A stretch of DNA of 63,410 bases, filler included, from Octopus bimaculoides (lineage: Eukaryota), in NCBI RefSeq assembly GCF_001194135.2. It is 7 parts of 6 records of this genome, joined end to end, with 100 filler letters (N's around TTAATTAATTAA, not from the genome) between each part and the next. Parts side by side here need not be neighbours in the genome. Positions count along the whole stretch, not along the records: positions 50,508 to 57,011 come from NW_026432060.1; 6 more parts are not named here. The stretch is one strand, 5' to 3'. A program made the position numbers and the translations under genes. This document shows, piece after piece, positions 51,572 through 53,738 of the stretch. Below the pieces are notes generated by a model, which did not search any database, had not been told where the DNA came from, and saw only the letters and a list, made by a program, of their open reading frames with translations. Each line of letters opens with the position of its first letter. Position 1 is the first letter of the stretch.

Positions 51572-51723
51572 CCTGAATGCACGGTAAATTTTTTATTGAC
51601 CTGCTTCTCTTGATGGGTGCTCAGTATATCACTTAGTTCTAATATGTCGACACATGCTGGATAATTTTTGTCCCTCCAAATGGTAACCAGGAAGTGATTC
51701 ATCAGATATTCTTCGATCCTCGA
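51572..51723 (-). CDS. Protein-tyrosine-phosphatase-family exon (WPD-loop to P-loop), probably catalytically dead
   Basis: Acceptor tattttttcatattacag, donor GG|gtaagt, phase 0 to 2. Translation: SRIEEYLMNHFLVTIWRDKNYPACVDILELSDILSTHQEKQVNKKFTVHSG. The exon ends where PTP genes typically have a phase-2 intron in VHCS. Confidence 0.75.
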
Positions 51724-51879
51724 CTGTAATATGAAAAAATAGTAATGAACATGATGTGAATAAAATCCGAAAGAAAATATTTACGTCATATTTTCTGGAT
51801 TGATTCAATTGCAGTAAGTTTGTTCCTGTTCGAGTTATTTTATGACTGTGTCAACATCTAACACGACAGAATTTGAGGT

Positions 51880-53500
51880 CTTCAATTTTATTTTCTAGAA
51901 AATGGCCTTGGAACATTTATCAAGACTTAATTCCATCCCGATATCATTACTGATTGCTTTCAAAGTACATAATAGGCCTTCAAGCTCATTATTGTCTTTG
52001 CCATAGAATTTTAAGTCATCATATAAAACAAATGACTTATTTTTTTTACCGTCAATTTTAAACTTATACCATGTTCTGTAAAGTTCGTTTGTAAAAGGTA
52101 TTGCAGCTATGCAAAAAATAATTAAAGGTAAAAAGAAGTTACCTTGGAAAATGCTACAGCTGATACTGATATATTTTTGTGGTCAGTACTCCCTTAGAGT
52201 GGTATAATTGGAGATTCGTATTCCACACTGACATATTGTGCTTCAGGAAGTTTGAAATTACGGGTAAAATTTCGAAGTTATCTAGCGATTTCAAGATCCA
52301 TGAATGCGGTATACTACCAATAGCCTTTTTTATAATCAATCCACGCGGAACTGAGATTTCCACGTATGTCATGACAGTTCATAATGATCATGTGATTGAT
52401 TGATTAAGAGTTAATCTTTACATTCATGTGAGCCTCGTCGTCACCCTTATTCATTCAGTGAGAAAAATATCGTTCTGTTCCATAAAGGCGTAGATTTTCT
52501 CCCCGAAGATGGATGATAAAATTTTCGAAGTGGTAGATTAAGAGGTAGATAAACAGCACTGATAATTTTTGGAAATTTGGTTTCATTATTCCTTGGAAGT
52601 AGGTAAGTAATACCTTTTGCTAAGCAATCAGGTGTTTTCTTAGTATCTCTCATAATTTCATTAACTCGCTGAACTAACTCTTATTGTGCGCAGCCTTCCA
52701 CTTACGAACCTTCATGAGTGTCATCCTTAGCTCTGCTATTTTGATGTCTTCCCATACTTGTTCTGCTAAATTTTGATAAGATTCTTTTGTGCTTCTAATC
52801 CAGTCTGAATTTTTATTGTATGTCTTTTCATCACTCCAAATATTTTTCCAAAACTTTTCAACTTCTTCCATGGGAAGGTGTCTTCAACAGTTATTTTCTT
52901 CCCACCCCCTATTTCTCTGTAGAATATTTTCGCATCGGCCGTGAACAAAACTTGTTTCTCTTCTCAAATCTTCATATTATTTGACCATTTGCTCGAACGT
53001 TTTGTTGCAGTGTTCCTTTTGTTAAAAGCAGTTCTTCTCTCGGCGAGAGTCTTTATTTTCTCTTCATCTTCTTTTCTTTTCTAGATCCCACATCAATTCC
53101 AAAGATTAATAATAAATTTAATATTAATATTTAAATTCTCATTTATTCAATCTCTTTCTCAATTTTACTTTGGATCGCAAGCTTATTCTGGATTTTCTGC
53201 TTCATACCTATCATATCTGAAACTTCTGGTGTATGATTATAATACTTCTTATTTCTTCGTATTTCTTAATGCTGGAATAACGCCCATGGTCTGAAAATTC
53301 TGGCATGCCTCTAGATATATTCATTTTTGCCAAACACCGCGGTACCAGACACAATGTTGTTGGTTGTTTCTTCCGACCATCCATACATTTTACCATAACT
53401 TCATGTATTCTATTTCATTTGCATGTTTTTGGTGGCTTCTTCTACAACAAAATCCTTCATTGGGTTGTTATGTTGAGCCAAAAAAAATATAATACTGGAA
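51880..53500 (-). mobile_element. Dong/R4-clade LINE remnant in the PTP-gene intron
   Basis: MEEVEKFWKNIWSDEKTYNKNSDWI; KTPDCLAKGITYLLPRN; KKAIGSIPHSWILKSL; YxDDLKFYGK. Confidence 0.85.
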
Positions 53501-53600
53501 TATAGTACAAATAGGAATGTAAGATATTTCTTCCAATATACTATAATTTCCTCTTCAAAAGTGGAATTATTTTATAAACATCTAAAAACACCAAACTTAC

Positions 53601-53738
53601 CTTTCTTTTGTTATGAAACTTAATCTTCAAAACACTATGTACACATATATCTTTGTCCTCAAGACTAATTACTTGTAGGAGATATGGCCCAATTTTAACA
53701 GATCCGTTTAGCGTCTTAGGCAAGTAATTAGGTGGATC
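53601..53738 (-). CDS. Protein-tyrosine-phosphatase-family exon (YWP / beta-strand region)
   Basis: Acceptor tttgtttcttttttccgcatag, donor AAG|gtaagt, phase 0 to 0. Translation: DPPNYLPKTLNGSVKIGPYLLQVISLEDKDICVHSVLKIKFHNKRK. Splices in frame to 51723. Confidence 0.75.

What the first reader, a model, noticed from the sequence alone, without database searches (positions are those of the whole stretch)
51572..53738. Hidden minus-strand gene encoding a divergent, probably dead PTP domain (Cys to Ser, WPD to WRD)
Seen: two exons with near-consensus splice sites join in frame across a LINE-filled 1.9-kb intron. They give DPPNYLPKTLNGSVKIGPYLLQVISLEDKDICVHSVLKIKFHNKRK-SRIEEYLMNHFLVTIWRDKNYPACVDILELSDILSTHQEKQVNKKFTVHSG|. 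The ORF track does not show the joined product. Established: classical PTP domains run YWP...G...WPD loop...VHCSAGxGR, often with a phase-2 intron inside HCS. Inference: this is a PTP-fold domain whose nucleophilic Cys is Ser (TCA) and whose WPD loop is WRD. It would be a natural pseudophosphatase or substrate-trap-like domain (or a receptor-PTP D2) that may act as a phosphotyrosine binder or scaffold.
Basis: partly seen in the sequence, partly recalled or inferred. Interest (0 to 1): 0.7.

Follow-up and report, generated by a model that had tools for sequence, protein, structure and literature searches.

The report
Dead second phosphatase domain, octopus receptor
These are two real, unannotated exons from the catalytically dead second (D2) phosphatase domain of an octopus receptor-type tyrosine phosphatase gene; such dead D2 domains are a textbook feature, so this is a sound annotation catch rather than a discovery.

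Summary
Minus-strand exons 53738-53601 (138 nt) and 51723-51572 (152 nt), each with a pyrimidine tract and AG in front and GTAAGT behind, join in frame. The product matches Pfam PF00102 above its cut-off. The piece is collinear, introns included, with an Octopus vulgaris locus, so it is the orthologue from another octopod. There an independent gene model joins the same two exons.

The intron after ...CAT TCA GG| is the same phase-2 intron that splits HC|S in the canonical D1 of this gene family. The window's Ser therefore sits exactly at the nucleophile position. O. vulgaris and O. sinensis carry the same TCA codon, so it is not an assembly error.

In the orthologue the domain continues as HSSDKFHKSG (Arg to Lys, both Gly lost) and ends the protein. 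Its best solved relatives are D2 domains, with RPTP-gamma D2 first. An active-looking D1 lies just upstream in O. sinensis.

The exons are under weak constraint: omega is 0.40, there are no indels or stops, but they change as fast as the flanking intron.

Verdict: these are D2 pseudophosphatase exons, most likely a non-catalytic structural or docking domain. A phosphotyrosine-trap role is unlikely. This is a new member of a known kind, of low to moderate interest.

The parts
53601..53738 (-). Exon A of the D2 PTP domain (138 nt, phase 0 to 0): DPPNYLPKTLNGSVKIGPYLLQVISLEDKDICVHSVLKIKFHNKRK. YLP (53726-53718) stands where canonical domains have YWP.
   Evidence: Orthologous O. vulgaris exon L001 24399-24536 has the same length and 78% nt identity. 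It is part of the PF00102 match.
53739..53768 (-). Acceptor of exon A: pyrimidine tract plus AG (ttttaacatttgtttcttttttccgcatAG)
   Evidence: The AG is conserved in O. vulgaris.
53595..53600 (-). Donor of exon A: GTAAGT
   Evidence: O. vulgaris has gtaagt at the same place.
51724..53600 (-). Intron of 1877 nt between exons A and B. The stretch from about 51830 to 53100 holds a decayed non-LTR reverse-transcriptase remnant on the same strand.
   Evidence: RVT_1 E 3.5e-4, 20.8 bits, below the cut-off. The central 1.4 kb has no counterpart in the 8.7-kb O. vulgaris intron, while both ends are collinear with it.
51572..51723 (-). Exon B of the D2 PTP domain (152 nt, phase 0 to 2): SRIEEYLMNHFLVTIWRDKNYPACVDILELSDILSTHQEKQVNKKFTVHS + GG
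   Evidence: Orthologous O. vulgaris exon L001 33262-33413 has the same length and 81% nt identity.
51670..51678 (-). WPD-loop equivalent, TGG AGG GAC = WRD
   Evidence: It aligns to WPD of the O. sinensis D1 and of the P0002 D2, to WVD in O. vulgaris and to WAG in P0005.
51574..51576 (-). Ser codon TCA at the position of the catalytic Cys
   Evidence: The positional homology is fixed by the shared phase-2 intron immediately after it. O. vulgaris has the same codon.
51566..51571 (-). Donor of exon B: GTAAGT. It splits a GG|N (Gly) codon, in phase 2.

Best explanation
The two exons encode the central third of the membrane-distal (D2) pseudophosphatase domain of an octopus receptor-type PTP gene, from the YWP-equivalent strand through the WPD loop to the first residues of the P-loop. 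The rest of that gene lies outside this 6.5-kb piece.

Shown: the fold family, the exon structure, orthology to an O. vulgaris / O. sinensis locus, Ser at the nucleophile position, and WRD in the WPD loop.

Shown in the orthologue only: the P-loop continues as HSSDKFHKSG (canonical HCSAGVGRTG), so Cys, both Gly residues and the Arg are gone. The Q-loop glutamines are also gone. The domain runs to the stop codon.

Inferred: the domain cannot hydrolyse phosphotyrosine and probably cannot bind it. Like other RPTP D2 domains, it would act as a non-catalytic structural, regulatory or docking module next to an active D1. The half seen here evolves almost as fast as intron and is held mainly by reading frame and fold.
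For: PF00102 scores above its cut-off for the window peptide, and 63.1 bits, E 3.9e-17, for the full orthologous domain P0004.

The piece is collinear with O. vulgaris L001 through exons and introns at 66-81% identity.

The exon chain D2ex0-A-B-C-D that I reconstructed in L001, with fitting phases and a stop, is 100% identical to the independent O. sinensis RefSeq model P0004.

The window peptide aligns to the second domain of the tandem-PTP paralogue P0002.

The same phase-2 intron follows the nucleophile codon in D1 and D2 of all loci examined.

The best solved relatives by sequence are D2 domains: RPTP-gamma 2nlk 382-581 (E 1e-8), then zeta, alpha, CD45 and sigma. The printed RPTP-gamma D2 alignment also shows no Cys (VHDEYGAVSAG).

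All 50 top fold-search hits are classical PTP domains, and the best query TM-score, 0.62, is the RPTP-epsilon D2.

An active-looking D1 (WPD, VHC|SAGVGRTG) and a linker lie 3-9 kb upstream on the same strand in O. sinensis.

Evidence of constraint: omega 0.40 (Fisher p 0.005); no indels where 3.5 are expected (P 0.03); a neutral simulation gives an open frame with omega this low in 1.3% of runs; all four splice sites are kept.

Published roles of D2 domains in substrate recruitment, regulation and scaffolding: PMC7320164, PMC9640194, PMC6994669, PMC2638020.
Against: Exon substitution rate is no lower than that of the flanking alignable intron (79.7 vs 78.0% identity, p 0.61), so constraint is weak and the exons could be drifting.

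No transcript evidence was available for the source species, and no protein with this sequence exists in either protein collection.

The P-loop exon, the first D2 exon and D1 all fall outside the piece, so for this species they are inferred from orthologues.

In O. sinensis the public annotation splits D1 and D2 into two genes. The only frame-compatible junction I could find between the linker exon and the next exon uses a weak donor.

The structure model is of modest quality (pLDDT 56) and was built from a PTP alignment.
Confidence: 0.72

Rival explanations
1. Relic exons. The D2, or the whole gene, is no longer functional in this species, and the two exons are drifting. Their open frame and splice sites are left over from a recently functional ancestor.
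For: Exon and intron substitution rates are the same. Under neutral drift an open frame alone survives in 15-18% of simulations and omega <= 0.40 in 9%. The gene is not represented in any protein collection for the source species. The catalytic residues vary freely among relatives: S/C/G at the nucleophile and R/V/A/P in the WPD loop. Lineage-specific mariner, LINE and SINE insertions crowd the introns.
Against: The combination of open frame and low omega (P 0.013), no indels (P 0.03) and four intact consensus splice sites is unlikely under drift. The orthologue keeps a complete five-exon D2 with a stop in the ancestral position. Exons C-D are about 85% identical between the O. vulgaris protein and the O. 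bimaculoides protein P0005, which shows the domain as a whole is constrained.
Confidence: 0.2
2. Phosphotyrosine-binding 'natural substrate trap' (STYX-like). Cys to Ser abolishes catalysis, but the pocket still binds phosphotyrosine, so the domain sequesters or protects phosphoproteins.
For: Engineered Cys-to-Ser PTP mutants are used as substrate traps, which is established knowledge. Several such C-to-S mutant structures appear among the fold hits. The WPD-loop Asp and the His before the nucleophile are retained in the window.
Against: In the orthologue the P-loop is HSSDKFHKSG: the phosphate-clamping Arg is Lys and both backbone-amide Gly residues are replaced. The paralogue's D2 reads HGSDGMKKSG. 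The Q-loop glutamines are absent (IIPDCESYAY against canonical VQTxxQY). The stretch where the pTyr-recognition KNRY motif should lie shows no such motif in the paralogue or the orthologue (judged by eye).
Confidence: 0.05
3. Chance open frames next to splice-like motifs; there is no gene here.
For: The window peptide alone gives only a marginal Pfam score (23.6 against 20.9 bits) and no PDB or word-index hits.
Against: There is a 65%-identical orthologue at E 1.9e-39 with the identical exon junction. The loci are collinear. The intron position and phase are shared with canonical PTP domains.
Confidence: 0.01

Closest known systems
D2 domains of RPTP-gamma and RPTP-zeta (PTPRG / PTPRZ1; PDB 2nlk, 6j6u)
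   Same: They are the best solved-structure matches by sequence to the full orthologous domain (E 1e-8 and 1e-4, both over the D2 residues 382-581/582). Both are membrane-distal domains that have lost the catalytic Cys and have a degenerate P-loop. RPTP-gamma D2 reads VHDEYGAVSAG in the printed alignment.
   Different: The nucleophile is Asp there and Ser here. Identity is low. The ectodomains differ: those two human receptors have carbonic-anhydrase-like and FN3 ectodomains (my own knowledge), whereas the octopus family's neighbouring or merged gene models carry discoidin (F5/8 type C) and EGF domains. No orthology is implied.
Typical RPTP D2 pseudophosphatase domains (PTPRK/M/T/U, LAR family, RPTP-alpha/epsilon, CD45)
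   Same: Same position in a tandem D1-D2 arrangement. They are inactive or nearly so, WPD-loop changes are common, and they serve in substrate recruitment (PTPRK D2-Afadin, PMC9640194), liprin-alpha binding (PMC6994669) or regulation (PMC2638020). RPTP-epsilon and RPTP-alpha D2 are among the best fold matches.
   Different: Most of these D2 domains keep the catalytic Cys and are highly conserved (PMC7320164). The octopus D2 has lost Cys, the P-loop Arg and the Gly residues, and its N-terminal half evolves about as fast as intron.
PTPRU, a receptor with two pseudophosphatase domains (PMC7320164)
   Same: The octopus paralogue P0002 also has two dead domains: D1 with WPE and VVQSSNGVGRSG, D2 with HGSDGMKKSG. 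That matches the 'receptor without phosphatase activity' idea proposed for PTPRU.
   Different: PTPRU keeps the Cys in both domains, while P0002 has lost it in both. The gene in the window appears, from its O. sinensis orthologue, to have a canonical D1, so it is not itself a double pseudophosphatase.
STYX / MK-STYX phospho-binding pseudophosphatases (PMC2873733)
   Same: The catalytic Cys is naturally replaced by a small residue in a PTP-superfamily fold.
   Different: They belong to the dual-specificity branch, not to classical PF00102 domains. My understanding is that STYX keeps the P-loop Arg and binds phosphorylated ligands (own knowledge, not checked here). The octopus D2 P-loop has lost that Arg.

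Membership tests
Classical protein-tyrosine phosphatase domain (Pfam PF00102, fold membership) | Profile match above the curated gathering score | tested here: met
   Window peptide 23.6 bits against 20.9, E 4.5e-5, profile 86-176/234. Full orthologous domain 63.1 bits, E 3.9e-17, profile 31-231.
Classical protein-tyrosine phosphatase domain (Pfam PF00102, fold membership) | PTP fold | tested here: inconclusive
   Orthologue model has pLDDT 56 and pTM 0.56. All 50 top Foldseek PDB hits are classical PTP domains with TMq 0.48-0.62. This is consistent, but the model is of modest quality and came from a PTP alignment.
Classical protein-tyrosine phosphatase domain (Pfam PF00102, fold membership) | Family-typical intron splitting the codon after the nucleophile (phase 2) | tested here: met
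   The same position and phase occur in the O. sinensis D1, P0002 D1 and D2, the O. vulgaris D2 and the window.
Catalytically active PTP | Nucleophilic Cys in HCX5R | tested here: not met
   CAT TCA = His-Ser at 51579-51574. O. vulgaris has the same TCA.
Catalytically active PTP | P-loop Gly residues and Arg (xGxGR[ST]G) | not testable with these tools
   The exon lies outside the piece. In the orthologue it reads SDKFHKSG (Arg to Lys, Gly to Lys and His), so the feature is not met there.
Catalytically active PTP | WPD loop with the general-acid Asp | tested here: inconclusive
   W and D are kept and Pro is Arg (WRD, 51678-51670). The effect on loop closure is unknown.
RPTP membrane-distal (D2) pseudophosphatase domain | Lies C-terminal to a D1 PTP domain in the same polypeptide | tested here: inconclusive
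   This is true in the paralogue P0002. In O. sinensis, D1 exons and a linker lie 3-9 kb upstream on the same strand, but public models split them, and the linker-to-D2 junction I found uses a weak donor. It cannot be tested in the window because D1 would lie outside the piece.
RPTP membrane-distal (D2) pseudophosphatase domain | The domain ends the protein | tested here: met
   The orthologue's last exon ends ...LYSNFVQ* at the same place as the P0002 C-terminus. This was shown for the orthologue, not for the window.
RPTP membrane-distal (D2) pseudophosphatase domain | Closer to known D2 domains than to D1 or non-receptor PTPs | tested here: met
   The top PDB sequence hits align to the D2 portion of tandem structures: 2nlk 382-581, 6uzt 479-592, 1ygr 539-602, 6j6u 382-582, 4bpc 470-574.
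STYX-like phospho-ligand-binding pseudophosphatase | Intact phosphate-binding P-loop (Arg retained) despite loss of Cys | not testable with these tools
   The P-loop exon is outside the piece. The orthologue and the paralogue have Lys in place of Arg and have lost the Gly residues, which argues against membership.

The most novel reading that the evidence does not exclude
Octopuses carry a lineage-specific family of discoidin/EGF-ectodomain receptor PTPs in which the phosphatase domains are being turned into non-catalytic modules. One paralogue (P0002) has lost the nucleophile in both domains. The fast turnover in the N-terminal half of this D2 (nucleophile S/C/G, WPD-loop R/V/A/P) would then reflect adaptive remodelling of a binding surface rather than relaxed constraint. 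That would make these receptors phosphatase-independent signalling or adhesion molecules.
Probability: 0.1. Interest if true: 0.45.

Novelty: new member of a known kind. Interest (0 to 1): 0.25.

Why it matters
The main value is to annotation. The two exons are missing from every protein collection searched for the source species. The public models of the orthologues are also wrong or split: the O. vulgaris model skips the last two D2 exons, and O. sinensis splits D1 from D2 and duplicates two exons across a scaffold gap.

Biologically, this adds a Cys-less, P-loop-degenerate D2 to the few known cases (RPTP-gamma and RPTP-zeta). It also points to an octopus receptor-PTP family with discoidin ectodomains, one member of which has two dead domains. 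That is of modest interest for pseudoenzyme evolution. It does not change what is understood about RPTP D2 domains.

Tried and rejected
- Word-index homology search with the 97-aa peptide found nothing. Only the exhaustive phmmer search found relatives.
- phmmer of the 97-aa peptide against PDB found nothing. The full orthologous domain was needed.
I used tblastn with the relatives instead, which found no further PTP exon in the piece.
- The first AlphaFold run, on a 4-sequence alignment, gave pLDDT 36 and was discarded.
- The third homology search, with the D1-linker segment, did not return the full-length receptor.
- P0005 has no DNA on record, so whether it is an orthologue or a paralogue is unresolved.
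- Exact look-ups of two window ORFs, meant to identify the species, came back empty.
- I considered that the O. sinensis exon B copy (lost acceptor AG, several indels) showed pseudogenisation. I rejected this because the copy lies in the last ~300 bp of a contig next to a 100-N gap, the adjacent intron has the same kind of 1-nt indels, and a second intact copy gives P0004. This is assembly error, and the duplication is probably a scaffolding artefact.
- ARAGORN, Rfam and the bacterial promoter/terminator scan gave nothing relevant.
- Literature searches found no description of this octopus family.

Full report
**Observation.** On the minus strand, exon A (53738-53601, 138 nt) is preceded by a pyrimidine tract and AG and followed by GTAAGT. 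Exon B (51723-51572, 152 nt) has the same features. WRD is at 51678-51670 and His-Ser (CAT TCA) at 51579-51574. The piece runs from 50508 to 57011 and has two N gaps, at 51137-51314 and 54555-55192.

**Is it a PTP domain?**
- The peptide matches Pfam PF00102 at 23.6 bits (cut-off 20.9), E 4.5e-5, over profile positions 86-176 of 234.
- On its own it finds nothing in PDB or in the word-indexed protein search.
- An exhaustive phmmer search of 1.84 billion representatives gave three hits, all from octopus:
  - P0001 (O. vulgaris CAI9733297.1): 65% identity, E 1.9e-39.
  - P0002 (O. bimaculoides XP_014769029.1): 821 aa with two PTP domains. The peptide aligns to the second domain.
  - P0003 (O. 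sinensis XP_036365301.1).

**Orthology.**
- The O. vulgaris locus L001 is collinear with the piece through introns as well as exons. Window 50649-51108, 51485-51813, 53225-53879 and 55194-57011 match L001 34063-33605, 33503-33171, 24895-24260 and 24168-22192, at 66-81% identity.
- The piece is therefore the orthologous locus of another octopod.

**The rest of the domain, seen in the orthologue.**
- In L001, exon B ends ...CAC TCA AG| and the next exon starts |T GAC AAG TTT CAC AAA AGT GGT. This gives AIHSSDKFHKSGLLCIIH... .
- A last exon gives ESYAYIWEVAEYLQKESILYSNFVQ and a stop, at the same place as the C-terminus of P0002.
- My reconstruction is 100% identical over its full length to an independent O. 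sinensis RefSeq model, P0004.
- P0004 scores 63.1 bits on PF00102.
- Extrapolating from the collinear blocks, the P-loop exon and the first D2 exon would lie about 1.6 kb and 1.3 kb beyond the two edges of the piece. That is why tblastn finds no other PTP exon here.

**Is the Ser at the nucleophile position?** Yes. The intron after exon B splits the next codon in phase 2. The same intron occurs in every domain examined:

| Domain | Sequence at the junction |
|---|---|
| O. sinensis D1 (canonical) | CAT TGC AG\|T GCT GGT GTC GGT CGT = HCSAGVGR |
| P0002 D1 | CAA AGC AG\|T |
| P0002 D2 | CAT GGC AG\|T |
| O. vulgaris D2 | CAC TCA AG\|T |
| Window | CAT TCA GG\| |

Three assemblies share TCA, so the Ser is not an assembly or allele error.

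The alignment places the WPD-loop equivalents as follows: WRD (window), WVD (O. vulgaris), WAG (P0005) and WPD (P0002 D2), all under the WPD of D1.

**D2 identity.**
- The best solved relatives of P0004 by sequence align to the D2 part of tandem structures: RPTP-gamma 2nlk 382-581 (E 1e-8), RPTP-alpha 6uzt 479-592, CD45 1ygr 539-602, RPTP-zeta 6j6u 382-582 and RPTP-sigma 4bpc 470-574.
- The printed RPTP-gamma D2 alignment shows VHDEYGAVSAG, which also has no Cys.
- In O. sinensis, exons of an active-looking D1 (WPD, VHC|SAGVGRTG) and a linker lie 3-9 kb upstream of the first D2 exon on the same strand.
- Neighbouring or merged gene models at all three octopus loci carry discoidin (F5/8 type C) and EGF domains. 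The family therefore looks like receptor PTPs with discoidin ectodomains.
- A first structure model from a 4-sequence alignment was useless (pLDDT 36).
- A second model from 19 sequences reached pLDDT 56 and pTM 0.56. Its 50 best PDB fold matches are all classical PTP domains, and the highest query TM-score (0.62) is the RPTP-epsilon D2. I count this only as supporting evidence.

**Constraint.** All figures compare the window with O. vulgaris.
- Over 96 codons, Sd = 20 of 58 sites and Nd = 38 of 230 sites. This gives dS 0.46, dN 0.19 and omega 0.40 (Fisher p 0.005).
- Exon identity (79.7%) is no higher than that of the flanking alignable intron (78.0%, p 0.61).
- The exons have no indels, where 3.5 are expected from the intron rate (P 0.03).
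- In neutral simulations, 15-18% of runs keep the frame open, 9% reach omega <= 0.40, and 1.3% do both.
- All four splice sites are kept.
- Exons C-D are about 85% identical between the O. vulgaris protein and the O. bimaculoides protein P0005, against 62-68% in exon B (my count).
- I read this as real but weak purifying selection on the half of the domain seen here, which carries the former catalytic loops, with stronger constraint on the helical half.

**Mechanism.** The domain has:
- Ser for Cys;
- Lys for the P-loop Arg and both P-loop Gly residues replaced (in the orthologue);
- no Q-loop glutamines;
- no recognisable KNRY motif.

It cannot be a phosphatase and is unlikely to bind phosphotyrosine. 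The best-supported reading is a non-catalytic D2 that stabilises or regulates D1 or docks partners, as described for other RPTPs (PMC2638020, PMC7320164, PMC9640194, PMC6994669). This step is inference.

The main rival is that the exons are drifting relics (about 0.2). No transcript data were available to decide between the two.

**Complications examined.**
- The O. sinensis assembly holds the first two D2 exons twice, plus an exon B copy with a lost acceptor and several indels. That copy lies at a contig end next to a 100-N gap, and the adjacent intron has the same kind of indels. A second, intact copy yields P0004. This is assembly error, not pseudogenisation.
- P0005 (O. bimaculoides, UniRef only) reads VYCS at the motif, with Cys present and His changed to Tyr, and WAG in the WPD loop. 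Its DNA is not on record, so its orthology is unresolved.
- The source species is unidentified. It is not O. vulgaris or O. sinensis, and it shares an abundant SINE family with O. bimaculoides.

**Novelty and score.** Dead D2 domains are textbook, and Cys-less ones are known (RPTP-gamma and RPTP-zeta). This is a new member of a known kind. Its value is a corrected annotation and a pointer to an octopus-specific receptor-PTP family. Interest: 0.25.

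Noticed in passing
window 53990-54554 (minus strand), abutting the N gap 54555-55192: Mariner-type transposase remnant spread over three frames. The frameshift-corrected peptide hits PF01359 at 37.2 bits (cut-off 24), E 2.8e-9. The orthologous O. vulgaris interval is only about 92 bp, so this is a lineage-specific insertion in the intron upstream of exon A.
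   Followed up: yes
window about 51830-53100 (minus strand), inside the A-B intron: Decayed non-LTR retrotransposon reverse transcriptase (FVLYDDLKFY motif, many stops and frameshifts). RVT_1 scores only 20.8 bits, below its cut-off. It has no counterpart in the O. vulgaris intron, which is 8.7 kb against 1.9 kb here.
   Followed up: partly
window 55998-56374: A SINE-like repeat of about 377 bp with a tRNA-like head (A/B-box-like sequence at 56365-56290 on the minus strand). Neither ARAGORN nor Rfam calls it. Three copies at 87-91% identity occur in 52 kb of O. bimaculoides (L002 24338-24724, 12033-12300, 36655-36779). It is absent at the orthologous O. vulgaris site, and only a 72% partial match exists in O. 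sinensis. This suggests the source species is O. bimaculoides or a close relative.
   Followed up: partly
L002 (O. bimaculoides), gene at 10001-42176 = P0002 / XP_014769029.1: This tandem-PTP paralogue has lost the nucleophile in both domains (D1: WPE and VVQSSNGVGRSG; D2: WPD and AVHGSDGMKKSG). It also has a long repetitive N-terminal region (IPEKTPK-like repeats). A discoidin-domain model of 691 aa sits directly upstream on the same strand. It may be a receptor with two pseudophosphatase domains, comparable to human PTPRU but without either Cys.
   Followed up: partly
L001 (O. vulgaris) 10001-57404, and L003/L004 (O. sinensis): The public gene models are wrong or fragmented. The O. vulgaris CAI9733297.1 model skips the true last two D2 exons (L001 35843-35983 and 36670-36747) and ends in a distant exon. 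O. sinensis splits D1 (XP_036365301.1, a chimera that begins with a corrupted D2 exon B) from D2 (LOC115218885). The O. sinensis scaffold repeats the first two D2 exons across a 100-N gap.
   Followed up: yes
P0005 (O. bimaculoides, UniRef 167 aa); no DNA available: This D2 relative has VYCS where the window has VHSG and O. vulgaris has IHSS, so Cys is present and His is changed to Tyr. Its WPD loop reads WAG. Its C-terminal 71 residues are about 85% identical to O. vulgaris, but its exon-B part only 62-68%. Whether it is an orthologue or a paralogue is unresolved.
   Followed up: partly
window 55905-55950, 51345-51397, 50508-50563: Microsatellites: (GT)n, (TA)n next to the N gap at 51137-51314, and (ATT)n at the edge of the piece. 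The (GT)n is also present at the orthologous O. vulgaris site.
   Followed up: no
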